Assembly: GCF_020745735.1 (NCBI RefSeq)
Contig: NC_083417.1
Location: 58,466,001 to 58,530,000 of the forward strand
Direction of reading: 5' to 3'
From: Hemiscyllium ocellatum
Taxonomy: Eukaryota
Length of the DNA: 64,000 nt
Positions 24,899 through 61,527 of the stretch are shown here, in pieces. The notes beneath the pieces were generated by a model, which did not search any database, was not told where the DNA came from, and saw only the letters and a list, made by a program, of their open reading frames with translations. Numbering within the stretch: position 1 is the first letter of the stretch; the number at the start of each line of letters is the position of its first letter. The translations under genes and the position numbers were made by a program.

Positions 24899-24978
24899 CT
24901 ATGTTGAGGTTGTATAACTTGATATTTCGTCTTTCGATGGTTTTTTCATAGCCCAATACCACAGGAATATGAAAAATC
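24899..24978 (-). CDS. ADGRG-like terminal coding exon ([26 protein letters not shown])
   Basis: cctttgcag acceptor; TAG at 24901-24899. Confidence 0.93.
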
Positions 24979-42900: not shown

Positions 42901-45900
42901 CAAGGATCTGTTTTAGGTCCACTGCTGTTTGTCACTTTTATAAATGACCTGGATGAGGGTGTAGAAGGATGTGTTCATAAATTTGCAGATGACACTAAGT
43001 TTGTTAGAGTTGTGGACAGCACAGAGGGTGTTGTAGGTTACAGAGGTGGGCTGAGAGATGGAAAAGGGAGTTTAATGCAGAAAAGTGTGAAGTGATTCAC
43101 TTTGGAAGGAATAACAGGAATGCAGAATAGTGGGCTAATGATAAGATTCTTGTTAGTATAGATGAGCAGAGAGATCTTGGTGTCCATGTACATAGATCCC
43201 TGAAAGTTGCCACCCATTTTGATAGCGTTGTTAAGAAGGCGTATGGTGTGTTAGCTTTTATTAGTAGAGGGATTGAGTTTCGGAGCCTTGAGGTCATGCT
43301 GCAGCTGTACAAACCTCTGTTGCAGTTGCACTTGGAGTATTGCATACAGTTCTGGTCACTGCGTTATAGAGAAGATGTGGAAGCTTTGGAAAGGGTGCAG
43401 AGGAGATTTACGAGGATGTTGCCTGGTGTGGAGGGTAGTTCTTGTGAGGAAAGGCTGAGGGTCTTGAGGCTGTTTTCGTTAGAGAGAAGAAGGTTGAAAG
43501 GTGACTTAATTGAGACATATAAGATGATCAGAGGGTTAGACAGGGTGGACAGTGAAAGCCTTTTTCCTCAGATGGTGATGGCTAGCACGAGGGGACATAA
43601 CTTTAAATTGAGGGGTGATAGATATAGGATAGATATCAGCGGTAGTTTCTTTACTCAGAGAATAGTAGGGGCGTGGAACAACCTGCCTGCAACAGTAGAG
43701 GACTCGCCAACTTTAAAGGCATTTAAATAGTCATTGGATAGACAGATGGATGATAATGAAATAGTGTAGGTTAGATGGGCTTCAGATTGGTTTCTCAGGC
43801 TGGCGCAACATTGAGGGCTGAAGGGTCTGTACTGCGCTGTAATGTTCTATGTTCTATACCACTCACCAGATCTCTGATTACTCACTTAGCCGATTTACAT
43901 CCCTTTGTTGGCTCCTTATATTCTCTTCACAAGTAACTTTCCTAACTATCTCCATACTATCAACAAATTTAACAAACATACCTTTGATCCCTACATTCAA
44001 ATAATTTATATAAATTATAAAGAGTTGCGGCTGGGGTCTTGATTTGAGGCTTGTTCTTGTTCTAGCAGGCCTACCCTTTAAACATATCGCACTTTCCCTT
44101 CAGTGACTCTGAGACTGAATCACCTGCCTCACAGGAATTTATCCCATCTTATTTTGAAAGAAAAGTTGCCACAGCTTTTCCGTCAGTCCATCCAATGCCC
44201 CACCTTAACATCAATCCCTTCCTCCTCAACAGCCAGTGATGATAATATAACACACTGCCATTAAAATAAAACTGTTGTCTATTGTTCCTGAGCTTTTAAC
44301 TTACACCAATGTGAAAAAGTTTTGGATAAAGGACAAGATAGATTCAGTTATGACAAGCCACCCAGTGCTTCAGCCAAGTTACTTCCTGCAGACAGACCCA
44401 ACATTCCACTTACTTTAATGATATATAGCTCAACAAAGTGAAACATCATCTGAGGGGTTGGTCTGAGAAATATGGAAAATGATACATGATCCAACACTAT
44501 TGGAATTATTGGAAGACAGTCCCATTGGTGACAATCTGATTGTATTCACTGAGTAGATGTGTAACTCACCTGAATACACAGTAAATGATTATTGTGGTGG
44601 CTGAGAAGATGGCAGAAATACCACAACCAATCTGTGAGATGTACATCAATGAAATCAAAACTTTCTCATCCACGGTGTTGTTGGTATCACTGAAGTCCTT
44701 TGGGAAATGAAGGCATAGACCACAATGAGTAAGAGTTAAATCCTGTCTCACCTAGAATAAATAGCCTGTCTCTGGTACCAGTTCAAAACACTGGGATTAA
44801 GCTACTTGATTAGTAGGATCAGCTCAAATGCAAGTAACTGTACATTGAAAGAAACTTTTGTTAGTGTGTGTAGAATCCTGGTGAGAGTTCACTTGAAATT
44901 TAGGTTAGAAATGGAGCCATTCTCCAAGTCCTCTTCTGGGATAACTCCTACAGAGGAATCTAGATTCAACTGGGGCAATGGTTTTCGACACTTTGGGCAG
45001 CTCACTCACAACCAGCCAAAGGCTGTCCTAGTAATCTCATCAGGCATGTCTCCTGAACACAGGTTCACAGCAAGTTTAAATTCTGTTTCAGCTCCGACAT
45101 GTGACTGGATGCCTGAAGGTTATTGCAAGTGATACCATGCATTAATGAGGTTCACTATTAGTAAACTTTGTCCCTTTCTCAGAGCAGCATGTCTAGCTGT
45201 GAGGCTCTGATGTCTCCGCCACCTGAATTATTCTGTTCCAGGTGCAGATGTGGATTCCAGTGTTGACATGGCCCTGTGTCCAGTGTAAAGTCATGGGCAG
45301 AAGTTGCATTGTACTTCACTTCCAGTGGCACAACTGTATTGAAGAATATCCTCTTGGTGTTGTGCAATTTCAGCTGCTAGATCCTCAAAACCCATCGATG
45401 AGAGAGAGAGAATTGAAAGCTGAGTAGCTCAGTTAAGGTCAGTCCTTGGGATCTGAGTAGGGATAGTCAGAAATCTTGACAAGTTTGCACTGAAACTCTG
45501 GCAAAGCAGTAGGCATGGAAGAATGTGAAGGAAGGATGAAAAGTCTGTAGAAGATGACAATGCTAAATAAAGGAAATATTTTGAGGAGATTCAGTGGAAA
45601 GAGTGAGTTGCCTATTGGCAATGACTATCACACAGTCAAGAAGTGTGTTGCTGGAAAAGCATCGCCTTTCAGGCAGCATCTGAGGAGCAGGGGAGTTGAT
45701 GTTTCAAGCATAAGCTCTTCATCAGGAATGACAGATCTCTCATACAGAAGGCATCAATCCAAAACTTACCAATAACACAGCAAAGTAGGAGAGATGGTCA
45801 CACTGACATATGATATGGCTATCCTGAACTGTTGTTTTACAACCAGTAGTATCCCAATGACCTGTTGAGTTGTCTGTAACATAAGGTTTGGTCTAAAATT

Positions 45901-48900
45901 TAGAGAATTGGTTTTCTAATATTAACTGTAATAGTTTGACAAGTCTTTTACTTACCATCTTCATTTTCAGACCAGAAGACACAATGTTGAGAGAAGTTAT
46001 TCTGAAATTCAAAAATAAATTGAAATGTTTTGTTTGGCTAGTTGGTGTTTCACTATAAATCTGTTGAAATGCCTTTAAACTATAGGTATACCACAAACAG
46101 AGACCAGTGTTTGTATATGACAATGCTTAACCTAAGATTGAATTAGACTGTGATTGCACCTCACATTTGGATTGATAACAATTAAACTGTGTATTTACAC
46201 ATCAGGGCACAAATGTTCCCTTGGTTAGCCATTATTTAATGTTTGAACATCCCCAGTAATAAAGGAACCTTTGTCATAACATTCAAATGATTGAAAGTGA
46301 ATTTAGATGGTCCTCAGGAAATTGAGAGACTTTCTTAACATGTGGCTTTTACAGAGTTGGAGTTCTATTGTGGACCCTATAAAGTGGAGTTAAACCGACG
46401 ACTCGGGTGGCCTCATATATTTTGCTGGATTCTTGTTACACACCTAAAACTGGCTCACATCAATGTACAAGTGGGAGCATGTCTGCAGCCTCAGTGACAT
46501 GCCTCAGTGGGTATCAACACAGCCCTTGAGATGTGCAGCAGGTAAACCAGGAGAAGTTCCAGAAGATCACTGTCAATAGCCTTGGTGTAGGGTTGAGGTA
46601 GTCACCAACATGAAGGTGAGTGAATTGGATAGCCCTCGACAATAGGTGCAGATATCCCAATGTGATGATTAATTTGGTTAATGTGCTAATTAGCACACAC
46701 ATACAGGCTTAGGAAGATAGTTCCTGTGTTGATGTGATTTACCCCACCTCAGGGCCAGGAGGCTCCAGAATAAGTCCCATCTGCTCCAAGACTATGTCAT
46801 ATCATCTTGGAATAGGGTGCTGAGGAAAATACCTACAGGGTGGTCAAGTTCCCGGCTGAAAGATTAACATGAATTTAAATTTAAACTGCAACATGTAAGC
46901 AGGTCAGCTTATGCATCCATGTAAAAAGGGAGTGTGTACTGAAAGAACAGATGGAATAATGCTCGCATTTGTGTGATGTCAACATTATTTTAAAACTTGT
47001 CTGTGCTACTTAAAACCAACTTGAAACTTTCAAAGAGAAGGAGCACTTCACCCAGACATGATGCAGGAGTTGGTTGTAGAAGAGACTTCAGGAACGAGGA
47101 ATACATTTTGATGTAACAGGACAGAAAGGATGTACAAAGTTTCTCAAATGTTCAGAAACCACTTGAGCATTATATAATTGTCACAACTCATCAATAAAAA
47201 ACAATCAACAGCTAGCATGTGAGTAGCTGACGATCCTTTTAATGAGCTCGGGTGTGGGGTCCTTCCTGAGGCTGTCTGTATTTAAGAGATAACTAGAGGG
47301 TTTTATTTTAAAATGGCAGCACTGATGTGAGAGCTGCTTGATTCACTGATTGCTATACACTGCAAACTCCAGCAGATACTCAGAGCCGAAAAAATAAACC
47401 GATATCTCCAAAACAGAGTGGTACAGTGGCTCATTGATTAGAACTGCTGCCTCACAGCACCAGGGACACAGGTTTGATTCCACTCTTGAGCGTCTGTGTG
47501 GAGTTTGCATCTTCTCCCCATGTCTGCATCGGTTTCCTGCAGATGCTCCAGTTTCCTCCCACAGTCTAAAGTTGTGCAGGTCAGGTGGATTGGCCATGCT
47601 CAATCCCATAGATTCCAGGGATGTGTAGGTTTGGTGGATTAGCCATGGCAAATGTCGGTATTCCGAGTTAAGATAGGATACTGGGTATAGGTGGGATGTT
47701 CTTTGGACAGTCAGCATGGATTTGAAAGGCTGAATGGCCTGCTTCCACATATAAGGATTCTATGATTCCATGAGCGATAAGAAGTGGAATTTCAAAGCTT
47801 AGATTGCTTAAATCAGATGAACAAAGAACTTTACTTTATAGTTTACACAGGGTGATAAATGTTCTGTCAGTTCTGAGCCATTTAAAATTGAACAAAAACA
47901 TATGTAGAAAACAGAATAGGTTGCTATAATGTCAATTTGGGGACAAAAAGAATAAAATTCAATCAACATAACAGTCTCCTCAATCCTCAAAATTCTTGGG
48001 AATTACTGAAGATTTTCTTACCAGCATTTTTGACTTAAGCTTAACTGTAATATTCACACACGCAGTGAGGTTATGAATGCTTGTGTTTCCTACAGCAATT
48101 TCAATCACGTTATTATTTAAGATAGTACTGTTCTTTTCATCCTGTAGAGAAAGAAGCCATGAGAACTGTCAGCAATGTACTGTACTGAAGAACATGACAT
48201 TAGGTATTTTTAACAATTCAAGTGTAAGTAAATAGGGCCAAACTAATGTTAGGGTCCACACACAGGATTTCACCTCATGTGGGCATTCCTTAATATTCTA
48301 AAAGGATGGAATCCTGCCTCTCATGTGGGACACAAAGTAATAATAAAGGACTTTGATGGACGAGGTAGTGAGATGAAGTCAAAGAGACTCTGAAACACAG
48401 GACAGTTCATATTCCATGGCTTTCAGAGCTGGACAGGTAATTTGCAAATGTTATGTCATCTGAAGCTAACTGCACTGACTTCAGAGATTCAGAAACCAGG
48501 GGGATCTTATGTTATGGATCCAGGGAGAGGTTACCAACTAACAATGTTCCCTGTAACCCAGAAGGTGCATTGGCACCTGTATCTCTGAAAGTCAGAGCTA
48601 ATGTCAAAGGGCTCACGATGGGAACATTTCAATGGCATCTTCCAAACCCACAACCTCCAACACCAGCACCTGCCAGTTCTCCTCCAAGCTGCACACCATC
48701 CTGACATGAAACTATCTTGACATTCCATCATTGTCACTGGGTGAACATTCCAGAACCCTCTTCCTAACAGCACTGTGGTTGTATTGAGTTCACAAGGACA
48801 GCAATGATTCAAAAAGGCAGCTCACCACCACCTTTTACCAGATGGGCAATAAATGCTGGCCCAGTCAGTGATTCTCACATCCAACTGGGGATGAAATTAT

Positions 48901-51900
48901 GCAATGTATTTGTTGGATCTCTGTACATATTTTACAGCAATAGGAATTAGGATGTAGAACAGACCCAGGTCATTGTACTCCTTCGAGTCTGCTCTGTCAT
49001 TCTGTATGATCATGGTTGTCATCTCAATTCCACTTTCCTGTCTGACTACCATAACCCTAGACTCCCTTGTTGATCAGAAATCTATTCAATGCTGCCTTGA
49101 GCAAAATCAACAACTAAGCTTCCTGTGTTTTCTAAGGAAAAGAATTCCACGGACTCACGGCTCTCCAAGAGGAAAACAAAGCCTTCCACATCTCAGTTTT
49201 AAAAGGATGGACTCCTGTTATCAAACTGTGGCCCATTACTCTTTTGTCCTCCACAAAAGTATTCATCCATCCATCCTATCAAGTCCCCTTTAGCGAGAGT
49301 TGAGGAAGTTACAGAGATAGAGAGGCTTGTAGGTTCTGGAGGAGCGTACATTGATCTGGAGGTTTGGAAAGGCTGGAGGATGCTATAGTGCTAGGAAGGA
49401 TTGTCAGGACTGGAGGAGGTTACAGAGATAAGACCATGAACCCATCAGGTGAAGGAGGAGAAGTTGTCCATTCAGCCCATCATATCTGTTCCACCATTCA
49501 ATGAGATCTTGGCTGCTCTGATAATCCTTACTGCCATTTTCCTGCCTTTAGCCCATAACCCTTGATTCCTTACAGTGTGGAAGTAGGCCATTCAGCATAT
49601 CAAGTCCACACTGACTGTCCGAAGAACATCCCACCCAGACCCAGCCTCCTATCTTAACCCGGTAATCGGTCTATTTCAGCCTTGAATACACTTCAACATA
49701 CAGACTACCTCCCTTATTCCTAAAAGTGAATAAAAGGGATTAAGATTAGGGTTAAATGGTAATTACTTTGCCCAGTTAATTGTGACACACAACAGTTAGT
49801 CATAGACCGAAGGGTTTGTTTCCATGCTGTACATCTCTATGACTCTATGATTCTATTAATGTTGACTTTGCCAGCAAAGGACTTTGCAAAATGCAATTCA
49901 GAAAAAAATGCGTGGGCTGTTAGTGCCTGTTCCCTACTACCCAGTTGATCGAATGTAGCCTTCCTTGTGTTATGAGAAGTTCCTTTCTACTTTCTCCTTT
50001 TTGAATTGGAGTGGTGGGAGGTGCCTACAGACATCAGTGCAGAATTGAAGCACTTTACCTCAAACAGTGATGTATCATTGAATAATGAGAAGGTGATGCT
50101 CGAGAAATCATTCTGCTGCTCCATTGATTTCCTGAACAATTCCTCTGGGAGGACTACCTCAATGTCAACATTTTGTTCTTGAGTGGCTCTTTCACCGACC
50201 TGCACAACAAAATAAATAACCATTTCACGTTTCTGTTCATCAATCATAATTTGTGGATAATCTACATTTGGAATGGCACATGCATGAAAATCAGATACTA
50301 AAACACTGAAAAAAAGGATAATTTCTAATTAGAATTATTGTTTGGGCAATTTAACCTTTAGGTGAGGTAGTGTAACCTTTTGGGCCTGTTCAGTTGACCT
50401 TTTGGGAGAAGTAAGTAATCTTTCAAAACTTTAAATTGTTCATTGAATTGTTCAAAGTAGACATGAGTAATCATGAAACGTCGATGAAAATGCTGCAACT
50501 GTCAAAGCTGTCATGGCATTTAACTCTCCTGCCCTCTAAAGTTTGGAAAACTGTCTGCAATGTTTAAGAAAATGGTATTTCCAATCCATCAAAGCAGGAA
50601 GCTGTGCTTTTTCTAGTTATGGGGATAGAAAGAATAGAATAAAATAAAACAATGAGTAATAGGACAATAGTAAGCTCATAGTATTGTTAAAAAAAACAAG
50701 CCTACTTTAGAAAGCATAGAGGAAATCTGAGAAAGGGAATAAGAGGGGAAATGAACCTAAGAATGAGAATAAATTAACAGCTAACACATTAGTAATGAAA
50801 TGGAAGTTAAAAGAAGGATAGGGCTTATTCGAGAACAAAAATGAAATTTTCCTTTTTCCAACAGTAGCTCTGTAACATACTATACCACATGGCATATGTC
50901 TTCACGACAGGATTGGATGCTGCTAATTTAGCAGTAAAAGAGGAGACAGTGGGAATAATGAATAGAATAAAAGCAGAGATGAATTTCTTAAATATGGCTT
51001 GAAAGAAATCAAAGGAAGAAAGCTCACCGAGACCAAGGGTTTATCAACCTAGATATTATCAACTTGTCCAGAGATGTTATTATACACCTTTTAAATGTTG
51101 TAATGTACTCAGACCCATCACTTCCTCTGGATGGTCATTCCACACACGAACCATTCTCTGTGGAAAAGCATTGCCCCTCACATACTTTTAAAATATTACT
51201 GCTGTCACACTAAAAATAGATCCCCTAGTCTTGAAATTGTCCACCCCAGGGAAAAAAGACACCTGCCATTTACCTCACCTATGGCCCTCATGATTTTATA
51301 AACTTCTATAAGGTCATCTCTCAACCTCCTATACTCTTCCAGTGAAAGAAAGACCCTGCCTATGCAGCCTCTCCTTATAACTCATGCCCTCCACTCCCAG
51401 TAACATCCTGGTAAATGTTTTACATAGGAACATAAGAAGATAGGAATGGGGAGCAGCAGTAGGCCATCTGGCCCTTCCAGCCTGGTCCTCGATTCAATAA
51501 GATCAGGGCTGATCTTCTTGTGGCCTGTGCTCCACTCACCTGCCCTCTCACCACAACCCTTAATTCCTTCATGGTTAAAACAAATATCGATCTTAGCTTT
51601 AAAAATGTTTACTAAAGTAGCGTCAACTATTTGATTGGTCCCCAACTCCAATCATCACATGAATTGTTTGGTTCCCAACATTTATCCCTGAGGCACACCA
51701 CTAGTTACTGATTGCCAACCAGAAGAGCACTCATTTATCAAAGTCAAAAAGTGTGGTGCTGGAAAAACGCAGCCGGTCAGGCAGCATCCAAGCGGCAGTA
51801 GAGTCAATGCTTCGAGCATAAGCTCTTCATCATTCTTGAAACGTCAACTCTCCTGCTCCTCAGATGCTGCCTGACTGGCTGTGCTTTGCAAATGCCACAC

Positions 51901-54900
51901 GTTTTGACTCTGATCTCCAGTATCTGCAGTCCTTGCTTTCTCCTAGCACTCATTTATCCCCACTCTTTACTTCCGGTTGGTCAACCAATCCCCTCTCCAT
52001 GCCAATACTTCACACGTAACACTATGCAGCTTTATCTTATGCATTTTCTGAACCTTCTCCAGGTTGATACTACTTTTTATTCTATTTTAGCTGAACTTTG
52101 TTAATTCAGTTACTGTGCCAGTTAAAGGTCAATTTTCCAGATCTTCACTGAATTCAAATAAACTTTTTTTTGTTTCTCAACATTACTTGAAGATAAAGAG
52201 AAAGTTAACGTTCTGAGGCAAGCATGATTCTTCCTTGGAATTTATTCCTTCAGCATTCCAAAGAAGGCTCATACTGGACTCGAAATGTTAACACTGTTTC
52301 TTTCTCCACAGATACAGCCAGCATTTTCTGTATATCTTTCAGAGTTCGAGCATCGGCAGTGGTGGGTTTTTCATTGTGTAGGGGTGAATGGTTGATGTTT
52401 GAGGTTGCGCTATCCACTGGACCATGTATCACAATGGGCCTAATTGTATTTCTTTCTCCCATTTTTATATAACTAAATATAAGCTTATCCCCATATCAGT
52501 GTGTACTAAGTTTGGTTTCATATTTAATCCATTACCCTACCCAATTCCCAGAGGCAGCCTGTATTCCTTGCTGCTGATGTATGCAGTTAGAGGCCTAAAA
52601 ATGAAGAGTGCATTACCAAGCAGAGTGAGGCAACTCACAAACATAACAGAAAATGCTGGAGAAATTCAGCAAGTCTGGCAGCAGCATCTGTGGGAAGAAA
52701 GCAGAATTAATGTTTCAAGTCTCGTATCTCTTCATCAGAGTTCAGTTTCTGGTTTGGTTTCAGATCTCCAGTGCCCACAGTTCATTATTTTAGTTTAAGG
52801 TGAGGCTAGCATATTAGAGATGAATATTTAATTTAAATCTCATTCAATTCCTTTTATGTTCATCAATATATACTAATACTTAAAACATATTGAGATAAAA
52901 ATCTAGCCTCAAATATGAACTTTGAAAATTATAAATATATAGGATACCACGTCAGATTTGATGTTACAAGGCAAACATTTCTGTACACGTTGAAAAATCA
53001 GGTCAGAGATCCTATGTTGTCTGTACCTGTATTTGTAGCTTTGCTAGGCACAGAGTTAGTGAGGTTACTTACCCATGAAGAATTGGCAACAAGTGTTATT
53101 CCTTTAAAACTTGAGCTGTTTAATTTTCTACAATAAGCTTTATATCTTGAGTGTATTTGTGTGATACTGTCTTTGTCAGAAGCTTCACAATCAGCTGTGG
53201 CTCTTACACATCTCCTTTGTAATCTATAACAAGAGATTTTGAAATACACAAGATGAGTAATGTAGATAGTAAAGTAAGTGATTATCAGCTAATTGAGGTG
53301 GTTAGACACTGGGATGCAGCCTTGTGGATCCAGCCGGATACAGTCTTGGGAGAAGAGATTGAGCAGTTGGATGGTGGACCGCCACTGGAATATTTGAAGG
53401 TTATGAGGTTGTTTCTTGATTATTATTGCAGCCAAAGAAAATGAAAGAAAGCTTCCAGGCTGAATAAGAGCTGTGTTTGAGGGAAATCAGAGGTGAGATC
53501 CTGGGAGGAAAATGTCTCTTCCTAATGAGAAAAAGTCAGAGTTTAAGGGATGTTTGTAATACCAATTACTACTGACCGAGGGGGCTGCTGAGCAGTTTGT
53601 GGGATCTGTCTTCACTGTGGTTGTCACTACATGTGTACTTTCTGGTCTTTGGCCTACAATAATGACCTGAACTTCATTACACTTGTTATTATCCCCCGAT
53701 AGGGTTCAACTCTAGTGGAATCAGATGCAGCATTCTGTGTCGCAAATGTTATAATCTCAACCAAAGATCACATTGGGTAATTTAGCATGACCAATTCGCC
53801 TAATCAGGGGAAACCCACAGAGAGAATGTGCAAGCTCCACACAGACAGTTGCCCAAAGCTGGTATTAAACCCAGGTCCCTAGCATTGTGAGCCTTCAGTG
53901 CTAAACACTGAGCCAATATGCCACCCGAATATCTATCAGGTTAATGAATGTGCTGAGCTTAGCTTATCTGGCCTCCTTGTGACTCCAGACCCACCGAAAT
54001 GTGGTTGACTCTCAGCTGTCTTCTCAGTACTGGTTAGGGATGGGTAATAAATATTGGCCCAGCCAGTGATAGCAATGTGAATTTATGGATTTAAAAAAGA
54101 AACCCTTTGATGTTTATAATCTCTCAACCTGAGACTTGAACAAACTCAACAGCCGAACCTCCACAGCCCTCTTGAGAAGGAATTCCTCATCTCAATGCGA
54201 ATGGTTCTACACACAATGGTTCCACACCAACAACACATGTACAAAAATCAACAATGTTCACAATTAGATCCTTAAAGCTAGATTTTTATTGATTTGGGAT
54301 TTACCATTTGCTGCAGTGAGATTTGAACCCAGGACTGCAGAACAGTACCTGGGTCTTTGGATTAATCGCTTAGCAATAGCAACACTAGGCATTCAGCCTC
54401 CCCTTAATGATCGGTATTCTAGAAGTTTAGGGAAAAAGCTGATAAAACAGAATACATCATTTTACCAGCATCATGGAGACAGTAAGGATTGCAGATGCTG
54501 GAAGCCAGAGTCAGTAGATGTGGAGCTGGAAAAGCACAGCAGGTCAGACAGCATCCGAGGGGCAGGAAGGCCCATGTTTTGGGCTGAAACCCTTCATCAG
54601 GTCTGTTCTGCTCTAATTCCAATTCAATCAACTAATCAATTATAAACCCAGGCCTTTTCCCAATCCTGATCCTGATCGGTGGTCTACGCTGAAAATATCA
54701 ACCACATAAACTTACTTGTTCTTAATGTTCTTTGCCTTTAGATTGCATGTTGTAGTTAGATTCTGGACAAGTACCTCACATTTATCTGATGTTAGAGTTT
54801 CTGAAATGAAATTATAAAAGAATATTGACTGAGTTTCTTAAACGCAATTAGTGCTCTCTCTTTTTTAAATTCCATCATGCTTCTCTATGTTAACAATGGT

Positions 54901-57900
54901 TAAACAAGTCAGAGTTTTTAAATAAAACATGGATCGATGGTTTAAAGAGCTGTCTCCAACTACTCATGAGATGAAATGTCAAGTTGGAGCTTGCTAACCA
55001 TTTCTTAAAAGCAGTTTATTATTGTACATCAGCCTGGAAATTGGAAGGTAGAGTGAGGAGGGATGTCATCCAGAACCAGGTAACATAATGAGGGGCAGGT
55101 TATTTCAGACTGAGATGAGGAATTCCTTCTCCAGAGGACTGTGGAGGTTCAGCTATTGAGGCTCAGACTGAGATGTTATAAACATCAAGGGATTTCTAAT
55201 TTAAATCCATAAATTGACTTTGCTATAACTGACTGGGCCAATATTTATGACCCACCCTGAACTGCCCTAGTACTGAGAAGACAGCTGTGGGTCCGGAGTC
55301 ACATGGAGGCCAGATAAACTAAGCTCAGCATATTCATTAACCTGATGGATACTGGGTGGCATATTGTCTCAGTGGTTAACAATGCTGGCTGACAGTGCTA
55401 GGGACCTGGGTTCAATCCCAGCCTTGGCCAACTGTCTGTGTGAAGTTTGCACATTCTCTCCCTGAGCTTCCTCCCATAGTCCAAAGATGTGCAGGTTATT
55501 TGAATTGGCCATGCTAAATTGCCCATTGTGTTCAGGGATGTGTAGGTTAGGTGCATAAATCAGGGGTAAATGTAGAGTATTAGGTTTCGGTGGGACACAC
55601 TTTGGAAGGTCAGTGTGGACTTGTTGGGCCGAAGGGCTTGTTTCCACACTATAGGGATTCTATGATTATACCTGGCCAACAATGATTTCAAAGTCACCAG
55701 TAGGCTAGCACAATTGCAACATTTAAAAGGCATCTGGATGGGTACAGGCCAGGTGCGAATAGATTGGTTTGGGATATCTGGATGGAAGGGTCTGTTTCCA
55801 TGCTGTATGATTCCAGATTTTGATTCAAAGCCCAATTACACATTCCCAGAGTGGGATTCGAGCTCACATCCTCAGGATATTAGTTTGGGACTCTCAGTTA
55901 TGAGCTCACTGACATGACCACCGTACTATCACCTCGCTCATACAGAGACCGCAGGAAAATGTTGCTGAAGTGGAAGATCAGACATGGTCTCAGTGAATGG
56001 TGGCATGGGCTGGTGAATGAGACTCACCTTCCCCCGTTTGTTTGTTTTTGTGTAGACATCCATTTTCCCGGAGCTCTGCTGTTCTCCTGCCAGAATTCCC
56101 AGGATAAATGGGGTTTCAGGATCAATACAGATGGCAGATTTCTGCACAACCAGTACAGGGCAAGAGGAAGTGTGATTTGGATAAATTCCTCAATTATCCC
56201 CTTCCCAAAACACAAAAAAAGTACATCTGACATCACCTAATTCCAAGATGAGGTGTTTGATTAAAAACCAGATATTTGGTCCATCTTAATTCATGATATC
56301 AAACCACGTCAAGTTCCATTGACAGCACAGAAACAGGCTATTCAGCCCAACTGGTCTATGCCAGTGTTTATATGAGTATCCTCCTACCTTCCTCACCCAA
56401 CCATATCAATATAACTTCCCATTCCTTTCTCTCTGATGTATTGATCCAGCTTCACCTTCTTGAGGGTAATGGATCAGGCAACAAATGCTGCCCTTCCTGG
56501 GGTGGGAGTGGGGGGTGGGAGTTGGAGGGGGGGAGGTGGTGGGTGTGCAGTATTAGGACCCGTGCTTTGTTTGACAGCTCTCACAGGTACACGAACCTCA
56601 AAGTGTACACATGAAGGCTGGAACCTGGTGCTGCTCTCAGTAATGGGAAACCTGTCTGTGAGGATAAATATATCAGGCCATTTTTGCCCAGTCTGTGGGA
56701 CAGCTGTCACAATTTTGGCACTAGCTGCCAGATATTAATAAGGAGGACTTTGCAGGTTCAACAGGGCTGTGTTTGCCTTTGTTGTTCCCAGTACCTAGGT
56801 CCAGCTGTTTCCATTCCATTTTTGTTTCTACCAGTTGGTACAACCAAGTAGCTGGCTACACAATTACAGAGAGCAGTTAGGAGTCAATCACATTGCTGTT
56901 GGTTTGGAGTTACATGTCAGCCAGACCAGGTGATGATGGTAGCTATCCTTCCCTGAAGGACATTACTGTGTAGGATGGGTTTTTTTCCCTGACAATCAAT
57001 GATGGACAACATGGTCATCGGATTCAAGCCCAGGTCCCCAGAACATTACCTGGGTCTCTGAGATAGTCTCGGGATAGAACCACCCTGTCATTGCCACCCA
57101 GCTAAACAGCTGAAACCTCACTACAGGCACTTAAATAGATGGACTCAGTCGTCATTTCAATGATCCAGACATGTTTAATCTGCAATTCTGTCCATGTAGA
57201 TGTAAATGTAAAAGATCTGAAAACTCTATTTGAGGATGAACAGAAGACATGTTCTGGCCAATATTTATCTTACATCCAACGACATTGAAACACATGCTCA
57301 AATCGCCCAACTATTCTCTAATCATGGGGCCTTGATGTGCAAACATTGGCTGTCATGTTTAACAAAGACTAAACATTCAAAGAATATCACACACTTTGGT
57401 AAATTTTGGGGTTGTGACAGGTGCTTTATAAATGCACAATTTCTTACTTTCATCTTCACTCTTCTTGTACAATAATTGTGACTTTTTAAAAATTTTGTGT
57501 TTATTAGATCACTGACCTTCGAGACGGCATAAATTCTCACAACATTCATCTGTGGAGATAAAATAAAGACAGCTTAGAACCTAGTTCTGATGGTTATGGG
57601 ATCACTTAACTCTGCCCATTGCATGCTGTTTCTGCTTGGTATACTGGTAATCCTGTTTGGGAGCTTCAGCAGTTCATCATCATATCTTTTAGGTATACTG
57701 GTGCTGCTCCTGGCATGCCCTCCTGTATTCTCCATTGAACCAGGGTTGATCATCTGGCTTGATGGTAATGGTGGAGTGGGGAATATCCTGGGCCAGGAGG
57801 TGACAGATTGTGCTGGAGTACAATTCTGCTGCTACTGATGGTCCATGATGCTCCATGGATTCCCAATCTTGGATGCTGCATCTGTTCAGATTCTGCCCCA

Positions 57901-60900
57901 CTTAGACAGTGACAGTGCCACACAACACTATGGAGGGTATTGTCAATGATTTTGTCTCCAAGAGGACTGTGTGGTGGTCACTCTTACCAATACTGGCCTG
58001 GACAGATGCTTCAGAAGCCAATACATTGGTAAGGATGAGGTCAAGTATGTTTCTTCCCTCTTGTGGGTTCCCTCGTTATCTGCTTCAGACCTTGTCTAGC
58101 ATGGATGTCCTTTAGGACCTGACCAGCTCAAACAGTACTGCAGCATTTCAGCATTGAATTGACATTGAAATCCCCCACCTAGAATACATTCTGTGCCCTT
58201 GCCACCCTCATTGTTTCTTCCAAGTGTTATTCAACATGGAGGAGCATTGATTCCTCAGCTGAGGGAGGATGGTACGTGGTAATCAGCAGGAGGTTTCCTT
58301 GCCCATATATAGCCTGATGGCTTCAGACTTTATGGGGTCTGGAATCAATGTTGAGAACTCCTCGGGAAACTCCCTCCCAACTATATCCCACTGTGCTGCC
58401 ACCTCTGCTGGATCTGGCCTGCCGATGGGACAGGACATATCCAGGGATGGTGATGGTGGTGTCTGGAATATTGTCTGTCAGGTATGACTCTGTGAGTATA
58501 CCTACGTCAGGCTGTTGCTTGATGAGTCTTTGAGACAGCTCCCTATATTATCCCATGGCAAACAGCATTAAAACACACATTCAAGTCATTCAATTATTCT
58601 CTAATCATGGGTCTTTGCTGTGCAAACATTGGCTGCTATGTTTAACAATGACTAAACATCAAAATTACTTCATCATCTGTCGCACACTTTGGGAAATTAT
58701 GAGGATGTAACAAATGCTTCACGAATGCACCATTTCCTCCTTTCATCCTCTCTCTTCTTGTGTAATAATAATTATATTTTTCCTTTTATTTTTGTTGATG
58801 AGATCACTGACCTTTTGATTTTCTCTTTTTGCAAATTTTCTTACAAACTCTGTCTGTAAGTTAAAGAAGACAGCAGTAAGGTTTGGAAATAAAAAGTAAA
58901 CTTCATTTATTGACAGAATTCTGTTTTTAGTTCTTACATCAGTGATGCCAATCTATCTTTGGGTGCTGGTTTATTTCCATTTGGTTTTTCAATATTGATC
59001 TTTGGCTAGTTAGCTGAGTTACCTGGGCAGCTGGTTTGCAATGCAGAGTGATGCCAACAGTGCTTGTTTAGTACTCCCACCAGCTGAGGTCACCATGAAG
59101 GACTCTCCTTCTCAACCTCTCCCCTCACATTGAGCCACCACCAGCCATCTCTCTCTCCACTGAAACAGCAGCTCTTGAGGACTTTGGCAATGTTACTTTT
59201 CATCTGTAGCATGATCCTAGTTCCAGGATGTTGATACAGCAACAGTGAAGGAACCATGATATAGTTACATGTCAGGGTGGGTCATGGCTTAGAGGGAAAC
59301 TTACAGGAGAGGTGATGCTCCCATGTATCTGTGGCTCTCTCCTTCTCCTTGACAGAGGTTGCAGCCTTGGAAGCTGCTGTAAAGGGAGTCTCAGTGAGTT
59401 AATTTAGGGCAGTATCGTACACAGTACACACTGCTGCCACTGTGCATTGCTGGCTGAGGGAGTGAATGATGGAGTATTAGTTGGGATGTAAATCATGAGT
59501 GTGGTAGAATAGTCCCAAATGCTAAATTTGTGCTAGATGGTTTCAAACATTTTGAGTGTTCTTGGAGCTGCACCTATCCAGGCAACTGGGGCATATTCTA
59601 TCACATGGTTGAGTTATACATTGTAGATGATGGTTAGGCTTTGAGGAGTGAGAAGGCAAATTACTCACCACAGAATTCCCAACCTTTGATGTATTTTTGT
59701 AGCCAGCTCAATTGTGTGAATGCTCCAGTTCAGATTCTGGCCAATTGTATCCCTCAGGATGGTGATAATGAGGGATTAGTGATTACCATTGACGTTGAAT
59801 GTCAGGGAGCAATGGTTGCATTCTCATTAGTTGGAGATAGCTATTGCCTAGTACTCGTGTGACTGAAATATTACAAGGCACTTATCAACCCAAACCTGGA
59901 TGTTGTCTACAGTTTGCTGCATAGAGACACAGGCTGCTTCAGAATCTGAGGACTTGGGAATGCTATTCAACATTGTACAATCATCAGAGCACGTTCCCAA
60001 TTCTGAAATTATGCAGGACACTAGAAGTTGATAGAGGTGTTTGCACCCAGAATACTACCCAGAGATGTCCTAGAGCTGAAATGACTGACCTCCAGCAACC
60101 ACTACCGTCCTCCTGTGTTCCAGGAATAAAGTAATCAGTGGAGAGATTTCCATTTAACTTCAGTTTTGTTACACTTGGTAAAATACTACCTTGATATCAA
60201 GGTCAGTTATCTTTATGACCCCTTTTTTAGATTAGACTTACAGTGTGGAAACAGGCCCTTCGGCCCAACAAGTCCACACCGACCCGCCGAAGCGCAACCC
60301 AACCATACCCTACATTTACCCCTTACCTAACACTACGGGCAATTTAGCTTGGCCAATTCACCTGACCCGCACATCTTTGTGACTGTGGGAGGAAACCGGA
60401 GCACCCGGAGGAAACCCACGCAGACACGGGGAGAACGTGCAAACTCCACACAGTCAGTTGCCTGAGTCGGGAATTGAACCCGGGTCTACAAGCGCTGTGA
60501 GGCAGCAGTGCTAACCACTGTGCCACCGTGCCGCCCATAACCTCACCTCCTTTGTCCATGTTTGGACTAAGGCTGTAATGAGGTCAGGAATTGAGTGGTC
60601 CTGGCAATACCCAAACTGAGCATCTCTAAACAGCTTATTGCTGAGAAACTGCTGCCTGATGGCACTATCCCTTTCCTAATAGTTGAGAATTGACTGATAC
60701 TGGGATAATTGGCTGGGTTGGCATTGCCCTTCTTTTTATATACAGGACATACCTGAACAATTCTTGACATTTCAGGTAGATGCCAGTGTTGTAGCTGTAT
60801 TGGAACAGCTTGGCTAAGGGAGAAGCAAGTTGAAGAGCATAAGTCTTCAGTACTATTATCAAAATGTTGTCAGGGCCCATATCCTTGCAGTATCCTGTGC

Positions 60901-61527
60901 ATCCAACCATTTCTTTACATCATTCTTTCAATCACGAGGCTGACATGAATTATCCACTCAGAATTTCTAACTGAAGAAGTTTGTAAATAATTTGCCTTGT
61001 TTATTGCAACAATGTGCGGGACTTCCCCATCATTGGGGATGGTAAAATTCAGGGAGCACGGTCCTTCTGTTCATTGGTTAATTGTAGACCATGGTTCATG
61101 ACTTGAAGTGGCAGCACTGCAGTGCCTAGTTTTGATGGTTATGAGATCATTTAGCTCTGTCCATTGCACACTGTTTCTGCTAGGTACACAGGTATGTCCT
61201 TCTGGCAGGTACAGGAGTTTATTGTCGCATTTTTAGCAATGCCTGTTCTGGCATGCCCTCCTGCACTCTCCATTCAACCAGGGTTAATCCCCTGGCTTGA
61301 TAGTAATGGTTGAGTGGGCAATATGCTGGGTCACGAGGTTATAGATTGCATTCAAGTTCAATTCTGCTGCTGCTGGCCCACAGTGTTTCGTGGATTCCAA
61401 ATATTAATTGTCTAGATCTGTTCAAAGTCTGTCCCATTTAGCGTGGTGACAACATTTTTTATTTTGTGTTTATGAGATCACTGACCTTCATCTTTTATTG
61501 TTTTGCAGATTTTCTGACAGTCAGCGT
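24899..61527 (-). CDS. Adhesion GPCR, ADGRG3/ADGRG5-like (GAIN-GPS-7TM); gene span of 14 identified coding exons, 5' end outside window
   Basis: Exons join in frame through GT-AG junctions with matching phases (1601 coding nt, no internal stop). GPS motif CVFW...W...GC...[13 protein letters not shown]; 7TM motifs IHMNL, TWMGIEA..LY, GWGLPA, LLGVTW, NSLQGFFIF. The sequence mixes ADGRG3-like and ADGRG5-like motifs, so no symbol is assigned. Confidence 0.93.
25974..26251 (-). CDS. ADGRG-like TM5-TM7 exon (CWIKEK...[14 protein letters not shown]...FNSLQ)
   Basis: tttttgaacag acceptor, AAG|gttagt donor, 278 nt, phase 2/1. Confidence 0.95.
26392..27072 (-). mobile_element. Penelope-like element fragment (GIY-YIG plus pLTR, degenerate hammerhead)
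   Basis: Homologous to the arms of the 33640-35080 element. Confidence 0.85.
27080..30134 (-). mobile_element. Ancient fragmented CR1 (3' end, RT, EN and ORF1 remnants)
   Basis: [18 protein letters not shown] and ETVWVE motifs in order along the minus strand. Confidence 0.65.
30135..33556 (+). repeat. 29-bp satellite, ~118 copies, consensus CACTGGATTGCCTCACTGTCAATGTAAGA
   Basis: Directly visible tandem array without spacers; 1043-bp higher-order duplication. Confidence 0.98.
33737..33772 (-). ncRNA. Minimal type I hammerhead ribozyme motif (Penelope pLTR)
   Basis: AUUC-CUGAUGA-A-GGGC-UUAU-GCUC-GAAACGUC-GAAU: intact core, stem I, stem II and palindromic ACGU stem III. Confidence 0.8.
34987..35022 (+). 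ncRNA. Minimal type I hammerhead ribozyme motif (mirror copy)
   Basis: attcctgatgaagggcttatgctcgaaacgtcgaat. Confidence 0.8.
36472..36565 (-). CDS. ADGRG-like TM4-ECL2 exon ([31 protein letters not shown])
   Basis: ttctttgattgatag acceptor, gtaagt donor, 94 nt, phase 1/2. Confidence 0.92.
36657..36958 (-). mobile_element. HE1-type V-SINE
   Basis: Full tRNA-like head and (ttaga)n-type tail. Confidence 0.9.
36965..38552 (+). mobile_element. CR1 LINE, 5'-truncated; same young subfamily as 5378-7862
   Basis: [16 protein letters not shown]; (ctattgt)n tail; near-identical to 6040-7862. Confidence 0.94.
39626..39894 (-). CDS. ADGRG-like TM2-TM4 exon ([14 protein letters not shown]...KLAVIGW)
   Basis: ctgtttag acceptor, gtgagt donor, 269 nt, phase 2/1. 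Confidence 0.95.
40043..40286 (+). mobile_element. Diverged V-SINE
   Basis: cagtggttagcactgctgcctcacag head. Confidence 0.75.
40287..41345 (-). mobile_element. Old CR1 3' portion, interrupted by a short Penelope pLTR (40887-41022)
   Basis: TRGH.FKV and NVFTQRVV motifs; insert flanked by the near-direct repeat cattaact(g/a)tataag. Confidence 0.75.
42010..43858 (+). mobile_element. CR1 LINE, 5'-truncated
   Basis: [34 protein letters not shown]; (gttctat)n tail. Confidence 0.92.
44570..44697 (-). CDS. ADGRG-like TM1 exon (DFSDT...[13 protein letters not shown]...YCVF)
   Basis: cttcatttcccaaag acceptor, AG|gtgagt donor, 128 nt, phase 0/2. Confidence 0.92.
45770..45861 (-). CDS. ADGRG-like GPS exon 2 ([10 protein letters not shown]...CQCDHL|SYFAVLL)
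   Basis: caacag acceptor, gtaagt donor, 92 nt; HL|S cleavage site and start of the Stachel peptide. Confidence 0.95.
45956..46001 (-). CDS. ADGRG-like GPS exon 1 ([15 protein letters not shown])
   Basis: tttcag acceptor, gtaagt donor, 46 nt, CVFW motif. Confidence 0.92.
47417..47770 (+). mobile_element. Diverged V-SINE
   Basis: tRNA-like head, tgtgtggagtttgca core, attctatg tail. Confidence 0.75.
48022..48141 (-). CDS. ADGRG-like GAIN exon ([40 protein letters not shown])
   Basis: ctttctctacag acceptor, gtaaga donor, 120 nt, phase 0/0. Confidence 0.92.
50059..50199 (-). CDS. ADGRG-like GAIN exon (VGERATQ...VLPEELF...FNDTSLFE)
   Basis: ttgttgtgcag acceptor, GAG|gtaaag donor, 141 nt, phase 0/0; LP..LF GAIN motif. 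Confidence 0.9.
51740..51944. mobile_element. Miniature inverted Penelope-like pLTR element
   Basis: Imperfect inverted arms; 14-bp TSD agcactcatttatc at 51726-51739 and 51945-51958. Confidence 0.8.
53073..53223 (-). CDS. ADGRG-like GAIN exon (LQRRCV...[18 protein letters not shown])
   Basis: ctcttgttatag acceptor, gtaagt donor, 151 nt, phase 2/0. Confidence 0.85.
54716..54800 (-). CDS. ADGRG-like ectodomain exon ([28 protein letters not shown])
   Basis: tttcatttcag acceptor, gtaagt donor, 85 nt, phase 1/2; matches the phase of the next exon. Confidence 0.8.
55354..55668 (+). mobile_element. V-SINE
   Basis: tRNA-like head and ...gtttccacactatagggattctatg tail. Confidence 0.8.
57517..57549 (-). 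CDS. ADGRG-like micro-exon C (33 nt, phase 1/1): [11 protein letters not shown]
   Basis: Acceptor ttattttatctccacag, donor AAG|gtcagt; joins in phase to the 54800 exon. Confidence 0.75.
58812..58853 (-). CDS. ADGRG-like micro-exon B (42 nt, phase 1/1): [14 protein letters not shown]
   Basis: Acceptor cttctttaacttacag, donor AAG|gtcagt; open in phase 1. Confidence 0.72.
60223..60536 (-). mobile_element. HE1-type V-SINE, young, present in only one duplication unit
   Basis: Near-identical to the other young copies; absent at the paralogous position ~62890. Confidence 0.9.
61486..61527 (-). CDS. ADGRG-like micro-exon A (42 nt, phase 1/1): (D)[13 protein letters not shown]
   Basis: Acceptor ttttatccctacag, donor AAG|gtcagt; open in phase 1; paralogous to micro-exons B and C. 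Confidence 0.72.

What the first reader, a model, noticed from the sequence alone, without database searches (positions are those of the whole stretch)
57517..61527. Tandem array of CxxxC micro-exons building a modular N-terminus on an adhesion GPCR
Seen: three paralogous micro-exons on the minus strand (42, 42 and 33 nt) share acceptor context (gctg(t/c)ctt...acag) and donor context (AAG|gtcagtgatct). All are phase 1/1, open, and in frame with the downstream ADGRG exons. They encode [14 protein letters not shown] (mixed charge), [14 protein letters not shown] (8 of 14 basic) and [11 protein letters not shown] (acidic). None shows in the ORF track in its true frame. Known: symmetric exons can be skipped without frameshift, and from memory human ADGRG3 has a single CxxxC near its N-terminus. 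Inference: a duplicated disulfide mini-module cassette lets the receptor vary its extracellular tip by combinatorial or mutually exclusive splicing. The flanking unit is still repeating at 64000, so more copies may lie upstream.
Basis: partly seen in the sequence, partly recalled or inferred. Interest (0 to 1): 0.82.

Follow-up and report, generated by a model that had tools for sequence, protein, structure and literature searches.

The report
Cysteine micro-exon array on shark receptor
Three tiny duplicated exons are real coding exons of an epaulette-shark adhesion GPCR; they belong to an eight-unit, fast-evolving array that builds a cysteine-rich receptor tip, but these three look constitutive rather than a splicing switch.

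Summary
The 42, 42 and 33 nt units at 61486-61527, 58812-58853 and 57517-57549 (minus strand) are phase 1/1 with AG/GT borders. They are coding exons 6-8 of a 19-exon gene. Its spliced translation equals, residue for residue, RefSeq "adhesion GPCR G5-like isoform X1" of Hemiscyllium ocellatum (633 aa; 7tm_2 and GPS by Pfam).

The array runs past the window: eight units over 21 kb, seven used and one with a lost donor. The signal-peptide exon lies 45 kb beyond the window end. The unit occurs nowhere else in the genome.

The splicing idea is only partly supported. All 13 RefSeq isoforms in three hemiscylliid species keep these three units. Skipping is annotated only for other units, and nothing is mutually exclusive.

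Unit number differs between species (7, 7, 9). Other sharks and rays carry different repeated Cys modules at the same place. The exons diverge faster than their introns (0.55 vs 0.66-0.72 identity). The array is 70% identical between genera against 92-97% for the rest, with every aligned cysteine kept.

No Pfam, PDB or Atlas relative was found. AlphaFold gives one short, low-confidence helix per unit. Read-level RNA evidence could not be obtained. The exons are already annotated; I found no paper describing the array.

The parts
61486..61527 (-). Micro-exon A (unit U3), coding exon 6. It is 42 nt, phase 1/1, and encodes [14 protein letters not shown] (net charge -1).
   Evidence: Sequence. Exact match to P0255 residues 97-110. 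GT-AG model.
58812..58853 (-). Micro-exon B (unit U2), coding exon 7. It is 42 nt, phase 1/1, and encodes [14 protein letters not shown] (net charge +7).
57517..57549 (-). Micro-exon C (unit U1), coding exon 8. It is 33 nt, phase 1/1, and encodes [11 protein letters not shown] (net charge -3).
54716..54800 (-). Coding exon 9, 85 nt, phase 1 to 2. It encodes [29 protein letters not shown], the first non-repeated exon after the array. It starts the first confidently predicted helix pair (pLDDT 68-80).
53073..53223 (-). Coding exon 10, a Cys-containing helix that leads into the conserved NSSWVGE segment before the GAIN/GPS region.
44570..50199 (-). Coding exons 11-15 (50059-50199, 48022-48141, 45956-46001, 45770-45873, 44570-44697). 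They encode the GAIN/GPS region, with the CDHL|SYFAVLL cleavage and tethered-agonist motif, and TM1. Exon 12 is missing from RefSeq isoform X5.
   Evidence: Pfam GPS 2.2e-15 at residues 307-350. Exon mapping. Isoform X5 sequence.
24899..39894 (-). Coding exons 16-19 (39626-39894, 36472-36565, 25974-26251, 24899-24978). They encode TM2-TM7 and the C-terminal tail up to the stop codon.
   Evidence: Pfam 7tm_2 4.8e-44. Best solved matches are ADGRG2, ADGRG6 and ADGRG3. Exon mapping.
57340..57516 (-). Conserved intron flank just downstream of unit C. It is 73-85% identical to the same flank of units U2, U4, U5, U6, U7 and U8, which marks these as copies of one duplicated exon-plus-intron unit. Unit A has lost this flank.

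Best explanation
These are genuine coding micro-exons of the N-terminal extracellular region of an ADGRG-family adhesion GPCR in Hemiscyllium ocellatum. RefSeq calls its isoforms 'ADGRG5-like' (X1-X4) or 'ADGRG3-like' (X5).

Origin. One ancestral exon of about 42 nt, phase 1/1, was copied with its intron flanks by tandem segmental duplication. The result is an eight-unit array over 21 kb, lying between the signal-peptide exon and the GAIN/7TM exons. Every unit starts after a borrowed G and ends in AAG|gt. Units can therefore be gained, lost or skipped without a frameshift, and each unit starts with D or E.

Protein (inferred). Each Cys unit probably forms one short helix that carries an invariant C-x3-C pair. 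The chain of six such units, with 17 cysteines and net charges of +1, +2, +6, -1, +7 and -3 behind an acidic Cys-free cap, forms a disulfide-linked, strongly charged stalk or tip ahead of the GAIN domain.

Splicing. The three units in the window are included constitutively. Variation comes from evolutionary unit turnover, fast amino-acid change at non-Cys positions, and cassette skipping of the more 5' units.

What is shown: exon reality at the level of gene models, array anatomy, phase symmetry, copy-number turnover, and faster divergence of exons than introns.

What is inferred: disulfide pairing, helical stalk architecture, and a ligand-binding or polyanion-binding role. I give the structural and functional part about 35%.
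For: - Gene model. Splicing the units with GT-AG junctions reproduces RefSeq X1 exactly (peptide blocks).
- Receptor identity. Pfam finds 7tm_2 (4.8e-44) and GPS (2.2e-15). The best solved relatives are ADGRG2, ADGRG6 and ADGRG3.
- Conservation. Orthologous units are present in all isoforms of C. plagiosum and C. punctatum. An independent C. punctatum annotation (GCC18687.1) starts inside the unit C orthologue.
- Array. There are eight units with shared acceptor and donor context, found only at this locus.
- Constraint. The C4-x3-C8 pair is invariant in the six Cys units, and every aligned cysteine is kept between Hemiscyllium and Chiloscyllium. The array as a whole is 70% identical against 92-97% for the rest of the protein.
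- Divergence. Paralogous exons are 0.55 identical against 0.66 and 0.72 for the flanks. The youngest pair, U5/U6, has 6 differences in 42 nt, all nonsynonymous. That compares with 4 in 300 nt of near flanks (p=3.5e-4) and 122 in 3055 nt of the whole unit (p=0.007).
- Structure. AlphaFold places one short helix on each CxxxC unit.
- Expression hint. A probable RNA run of the same organism holds 100% of the sampled words of a 7TM exon.
Against: - No read-level junction evidence was obtained here (one search failed). Exon use therefore rests on automated RefSeq models. That such isoforms need transcript support is my knowledge of the Gnomon pipeline, not something tested here.
- AlphaFold confidence for the array is low: pLDDT under 50 with the alignment and 54-77 from the single sequence. 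Foldseek found nothing.
- The array holds an odd number of cysteines (17), so simple within-array pairing cannot be complete.
- The faster divergence of exons is not universal. The U4/U2 pair is equal to its flanks (0.76 vs 0.74 and 0.76). It could also partly reflect gene conversion homogenising the introns.
Confidence: 0.8

Rival explanations
1. The three units are alternative cassettes, combinatorial or mutually exclusive, so that one gene makes many different receptor tips in one animal.
For: - All units are symmetric, phase 1/1.
- The donor GTCAGT is not a perfect consensus match.
- RefSeq isoforms skip other units of the same array: U7 and U7+U6 in H. ocellatum, the U4 orthologues in C. 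plagiosum X5 and C. punctatum X2 and X3.
Against: - All 13 annotated isoforms in three species contain the orthologues of units A, B and C.
- All units occur together in the X1 isoforms, so they are not mutually exclusive.
- The orthologues of these three are the best conserved units of the array.
Confidence: 0.12
2. Annotation artefact or dead exons. The units are duplicated pseudo-exons that a gene predictor strung together, and the real mRNA does not contain them.
For: - No read-level evidence was obtained here.
- One unit, U8, really is dead in this assembly: its donor GT is lost.
- Many orthologue models in other elasmobranchs lack an N-terminus.
Against: - Seven units keep an open frame, phase, AG/GT borders and the Cys pair despite 24-62% nucleotide divergence.
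- Orthologous units are kept in three species with every aligned cysteine conserved.
- The receptor's only signal peptide lies upstream of the array.
- Two annotation pipelines include unit C.
Confidence: 0.04
3. Neutral spacer. The exons are real, but the array is only a length-variable linker with no specific binding role. Its fast change would be relaxed constraint, combined with intron homogenisation by gene conversion.
For: - There is no Pfam, PDB or Atlas relative.
- AlphaFold confidence is low.
- Unit number and sequence differ freely between lineages.
- The flanks next to the U5/U6 exons are 98-99% identical while the whole unit is 94% identical. This fits local conversion.
Against: - Relaxed constraint alone cannot push exons beyond the divergence of their introns.
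- All six U5/U6 differences are nonsynonymous.
- Cysteines are strictly kept.
- The charge pattern is extreme rather than random.
Confidence: 0.2

Closest known systems
ADGRG-family adhesion GPCRs (the ADGRG1/3/5 group, also ADGRG2 and ADGRG6)
   Same: - It has a 7tm_2 domain, a GPS motif with an HL|S cleavage site, and a tethered-agonist sequence.
- The best solved-structure matches are ADGRG2, ADGRG6 and ADGRG3.
- PMC8584163 reports that the ADGRG1/3/5 group has common fish orthologues, which fits the mixed RefSeq names.
   Different: - The N-terminus has no known domain: no Pfam family for residues 41-215 and no PDB sequence relative for residues 41-180.
- It is built instead from a tandem array of 13-14 residue C-x3-C modules, each encoded by its own micro-exon.
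- The chimaera, sturgeon and tetrapod relatives retrieved show no such array.
Repeat-number variation and alternative splicing of extracellular modules in other adhesion GPCRs (EGF repeats of ADGRE2 and ADGRE5; the short alternative exon of ADGRG6)
   Same: The extracellular region is changed by adding, losing or skipping whole in-frame exons. PMC8584163 describes numerical variability of N-terminal domains. PMC6954182 was returned by my search on alternatively spliced aGPCR extracellular regions, including Gpr126.
   Different: - Here the module is a 14-residue peptide, not a folded domain of about 40 residues.
- The array turns over between genera.
- Each elasmobranch lineage has amplified a different unit.
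Micro-exon genes (MEGs) of schistosomes
   Same: They also have tandem symmetric micro-exons between ordinary exons, secreted or exposed products, variation by exon skipping, and accelerated evolution (PMC4350168).
   Different: - Units here are 33-42 nt and make up only the N-terminal sixth of a large receptor.
- The three units studied are constitutive in the annotated isoforms.
- There is no sequence relationship, so this is an analogy and not membership.
Twin CX3C helical hairpins (small Tim proteins, plant alpha-hairpinins)
   Same: The CX3C-X9-CX3C spacing between neighbouring units, and the predicted helix on each motif, resemble helix-loop-helix hairpins stapled by two disulfides. The resemblance is from my own knowledge of those families.
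   Different: - Neither disulfide pairing nor a hairpin was shown.
- The model is of low confidence and Foldseek found no match.
- There are six or more motifs in series with an odd number of cysteines.

Membership tests
Adhesion GPCR, subfamily G (ADGRG) | Secretin-like seven-transmembrane domain (7tm_2) | tested here: met
   PF00002, E=4.8e-44, residues 367-611 of P0255.
Adhesion GPCR, subfamily G (ADGRG) | GPS motif / GAIN region with an HL|S/T cleavage site directly before TM1 | tested here: met
   PF01825, E=2.2e-15, residues 307-350. The sequence reads CDHL|SYFAVLL.
Adhesion GPCR, subfamily G (ADGRG) | Closest relatives are ADGRG members rather than other adhesion GPCR subfamilies | tested here: met
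   PDB hits are ADGRG2 1.3e-90, ADGRG6 1.2e-88 and ADGRG3 2.1e-80, against ADGRL3 2.6e-41. All named database hits are ADGRG-like.
Adhesion GPCR, subfamily G (ADGRG) | One-to-one orthology with a particular mammalian member (G1, G3 or G5) | tested here: inconclusive
   RefSeq names for the same gene and its orthologues vary between G1-, G2-, G3- and G5-like. No tree was built. PMC8584163 reports common fish orthologues for the G1/3/5 group.
Tandem-duplicated alternative cassette exons | Paralogous neighbouring exons of equal phase, derived by tandem duplication | tested here: met
   Eight units, 33-42 nt, all used units phase 1/1, with homologous flanks.
Tandem-duplicated alternative cassette exons | Alternative inclusion of the three units in the finding | tested here: not met
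   All three are present in all 13 RefSeq isoforms of three species.
Tandem-duplicated alternative cassette exons | Alternative inclusion of other units of the array | tested here: met
   H. ocellatum X3 lacks U7 and X4 lacks U7 and U6. C. plagiosum X3 and X5 and C. punctatum X2 and X3 lack other units. This is model-level evidence.
Mutually exclusive exon clusters (Dscam type) | Only one exon of the cluster is present in any mRNA | tested here: not met
   Seven units occur together in isoforms X1, X2 and X5.
Twin CX3C disulfide-stapled helical hairpins | CX3C motifs on helices, spaced to allow a hairpin | tested here: inconclusive
   The C4-x3-C8 pair is invariant and nine residues separate motifs of neighbouring units. 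Helices are predicted on each motif, but with pLDDT under 50 (alignment) or 54-77 (single sequence).
Twin CX3C disulfide-stapled helical hairpins | Two interhelical disulfide bonds | not testable with these tools
   This needs disulfide mapping or a solved structure.

The most novel reading that the evidence does not exclude
The array may be a fast-evolving recognition surface under diversifying selection. In this reading elasmobranchs have repeatedly and independently amplified different Cys-stapled micro-exon modules at the tip of one adhesion GPCR. The modules seen are 14-residue CX3C units in hemiscylliids, 12-residue CC units in sawfish, 14-residue units in manta and bullhead shark, and 32-residue units in a numbfish. 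Unit turnover, charge changes and partial cassette skipping would then tune binding to a changing partner, such as a microbial or matrix polyanion.
Probability: 0.25. Interest if true: 0.7.

Novelty: new variant of a known kind. Interest (0 to 1): 0.45.

Why it matters
The N-terminal fragments of adhesion GPCRs decide what the receptor binds. Those of the ADGRG1/3/5 group are poorly understood.

Here the tip is made from exon-sized, disulfide-bearing peptides. Evolution adds, removes and rewrites them quickly while the receptor core stays 92-97% conserved. That gives a natural series of tip variants for asking what the tip does.

There is also a practical point. Many elasmobranch gene models of this receptor lack an N-terminus, perhaps because predictors miss such micro-exons.

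The exons themselves are already in RefSeq, so the value lies in the pattern and not in a new gene.

Tried and rejected
- Read laying. There is therefore no junction-level RNA evidence. Runs X1 and X2 (same organism, probably RNA) remain untested.
- The look-up of sequencing runs. No run is on record as RNA. X1 holds all sampled words of a 7TM exon, which is only a hint of expression.
- The search for homologous proteins with the N-terminus alone found nothing. With the region limited to 41-215 it found only the Hemiscyllium and Chiloscyllium clusters. By sequence the array is recognisable only within hemiscylliids, and no transcript-derived (Logan) protein was found.
- No relative was found for the array by Pfam on residues 41-215, PDB sequence search on 41-180, or ESM Atlas on 41-136.
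- AlphaFold full length with 36 sequences gave pLDDT under 50 for the array. Residues 55-180 as a single sequence gave helices with mean pLDDT 57.7. Foldseek against PDB gave only generic helical repeats at E above 2. I draw no fold assignment from these.
- The genome search with the signal peptide failed four times because the machine was busy. I found the exon instead by fetching upstream DNA.
- Exonisation from a dispersed transposon is rejected. The exon-plus-flank unit matches only this locus, although the deeper intron parts are LINE-like repeats with thousands of copies.
- A separate upstream gene is rejected. The signal exon, the array and the receptor form one open GT-AG model.
- Literature searches found no description of this array. 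That is a limited search, not proof of absence.

Full report
**1.

On the minus strand three short open units sit behind pyrimidine tracts ending in cag and in front of AAG|gtcagtgatct:

| Unit | Coordinates | Length | Peptide |
|---|---|---|---|
| A | 61486-61527 | 42 nt | [14 protein letters not shown] |
| B | 58812-58853 | 42 nt | [14 protein letters not shown] |
| C | 57517-57549 | 33 nt | [11 protein letters not shown] |

All three are phase 1/1. The ORF list shows only an out-of-frame ORF across unit C.

**2. What gene this is**

- Minus-strand ORFs at lower coordinates look like adhesion-GPCR 7TM exons.
- A search with the TM2-4 exon found shark and ray ADGRG-like proteins.
- One cluster comes from Hemiscyllium ocellatum, on a contig of 84,986,831 bases. 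That is exactly the length of the window's contig, so the genome is the epaulette shark.
- RefSeq isoform X1 (P0255, XP_060693768.1, 633 aa) maps to the window and its upstream DNA in exact peptide blocks.
- A model with GT-AG at all 18 junctions translates to it exactly.
- The three units are coding exons 6, 7 and 8.
- Pfam finds 7tm_2 (4.8e-44) and GPS (2.2e-15).
- The best solved relatives are ADGRG2, ADGRG6 and ADGRG3.
- Which mammalian member it corresponds to is unclear. RefSeq itself uses G5-like and G3-like for isoforms of this one gene. PMC8584163 says that the G1/3/5 group shares common fish orthologues.

**3. The array is larger than the finding**

The donor motif recurs upstream of the window. 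I fetched 70 kb of upstream DNA. Eight units lie within 21 kb:

| Unit | Position | Peptide | Status |
|---|---|---|---|
| U8 | about +14383 past the window end | EKCEEFCETLKSA | donor GT lost by one missing G; not in RefSeq |
| U7 | +12429 | EESEGTSEDQTST | used; acidic, no Cys |
| U6 | +8132 | ENCCKKCDCYLPPK | used |
| U5 | +2923 | ENCCKKCCSQLQPK | used |
| U4 | +454 | DRNCKKICKMLKRK | used |
| U3 | unit A, in window | [14 protein letters not shown] | used |
| U2 | unit B, in window | [14 protein letters not shown] | used |
| U1 | unit C, in window | [11 protein letters not shown] | used |

- The signal-peptide exon lies 45.4 kb beyond the window end, and no further unit lies in between.
- The exon-plus-flank unit matches only this locus in the genome. 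It is therefore a local tandem duplication and not a dispersed element.
- The deeper intron parts are LINE-like repeats that were copied along with the unit.

**4. Splicing**

I could not lay reads. The evidence is therefore at the level of gene models.

- In H. ocellatum, X1, X2 and X5 contain all seven used units. X3 lacks U7, and X4 lacks U7 and U6.
- In Chiloscyllium plagiosum, X3 lacks the first acidic unit and X5 lacks the U4 orthologue.
- In C. punctatum, X2 lacks both U4 copies, and X3 also lacks one 5' unit.
- The orthologues of A, B and C are present in all 13 isoforms.
- An older, independent C. punctatum annotation begins inside the unit C orthologue.

So the array does contain cassette exons, but the three units of the finding look constitutive. 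Mutual exclusion is ruled out because the units occur together.

From my knowledge of the pipeline, RefSeq makes alternative isoforms only where transcripts support them. I did not test that here. A probable RNA run of the same organism holds all sampled words of a 7TM exon.

**5. Evolution**

- *Copy number.* H. ocellatum uses 7 units, C. plagiosum 7 and C. punctatum 9. Different units are duplicated in each: U5/U6 only in Hemiscyllium, U4 twice in C. punctatum, and three acidic CX3C units in C. punctatum.
- *Other elasmobranchs.* Models that include a signal peptide or N-terminal repeats show other repeats at the same position. Sawfish has six 12-residue DKCCN units. Manta has five 14-residue units. 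Bullhead shark has three 14-residue NDKPC units. Numbfish has three 32-residue units. The chimaera, sturgeon and tetrapod relatives that I retrieved show none. I could not check the exon structure in those species.
- *Between genera.* Between Hemiscyllium and Chiloscyllium the array is 70-71% identical, against 91-92% for the rest of the extracellular region and 96-97% for the 7TM part. Every aligned cysteine is kept.
- *Between paralogous units.* The exons are less alike (pooled identity 0.55) than 150 nt of upstream (0.66) or downstream (0.72) intron.
- *The youngest pair, U5/U6.* It has 6 differences in 42 exon bases, all nonsynonymous. The near flanks have 4 in 300 (p=3.5e-4) and the whole unit 122 in 3055 (p=0.007).
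- *Exceptions.* The pattern is not universal; the U4/U2 exon is as similar as its flanks. Intron homogenisation by gene conversion could also contribute.

An earlier first-reader note on this stretch (s1-148371) had raised the exon-versus-intron point. My counts support it in part.

**6. Structure and function**

- No Pfam family (residues 41-215), PDB sequence relative (41-180) or Atlas look-alike (41-136) was found for the array.
- AlphaFold with a 36-sequence alignment gives pLDDT under 50 for residues 30-135, with short helices centred on the CxxxC motifs. Confidence rises from residue 136.
- A single-sequence run of residues 55-180 gives one helix per unit, with units A and B fused into one long helix, at pLDDT 54-77.
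- Foldseek found only generic helical repeats at E above 2.
- The motif spacing, CX3C-X9-CX3C, recalls disulfide-stapled helical hairpins. That resemblance is a lead from memory and has not been shown here.
- The used array has 17 cysteines. Net unit charges run -5, +1, +2, +6, -1, +7, -3.

My working model is a disulfide-linked, strongly charged helical stalk or tip that may bind polyanions. I give that structural and functional part about 35%.

**7. Novelty**

The exons are already annotated in RefSeq, so the gene model is not new. My literature searches found no account of a micro-exon CX3C array on an adhesion GPCR or of its turnover in elasmobranchs. The nearest concepts are:
- repeat-number variation of extracellular modules in other adhesion GPCRs (PMC8584163);
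- the symmetric micro-exon genes of schistosomes (PMC4350168).

I class it as a new variant of a known kind, of moderate interest.

Noticed in passing
window 30137-33555: A minisatellite with a 29-nt period, 118 copies and 88% matches. It lies in the long intron between coding exons 17 and 18 of the receptor and produces many spurious 54-83 aa ORFs.
   Followed up: partly
window 33906-34853: Two almost identical 192-aa ORFs lie on opposite strands (33906-34484 minus, 34275-34853 plus), which indicates an inverted duplication in the same intron.
   Followed up: no
about 14.4 kb beyond the window end (G000:C50, near 58544383-58544421): An eighth array unit (EKCEEFCETLKSA) has an intact acceptor and open frame, but one G is missing at its donor (CAG|tcagtgatct). 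Its orthologue is a used exon in both Chiloscyllium species. It is either a recent exon death or a one-base assembly error.
   Followed up: partly
window 48022-48141: Coding exon 12 (120 nt, phase 0/0) is missing from RefSeq isoform X5. Its absence removes 40 residues upstream of the GPS motif.
   Followed up: partly
window 60250-60540: By eye, a SINE-like insert (ggcacggtggcacagtggttagc...) lies in the intron between units A and B. The read laying filter tripped inside it (60398-60458).
   Followed up: no
window about 700-900: A run of N (assembly gap or mask) lies inside a CA/TG-rich simple-repeat region.
   Followed up: no
proteins P0151-P0154, P0161-P0163, P0165: Many RefSeq models of this receptor in other sharks and rays start without a signal peptide, just before or inside the GAIN region. 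Their micro-exon N-termini may have been missed by the predictors.
   Followed up: no
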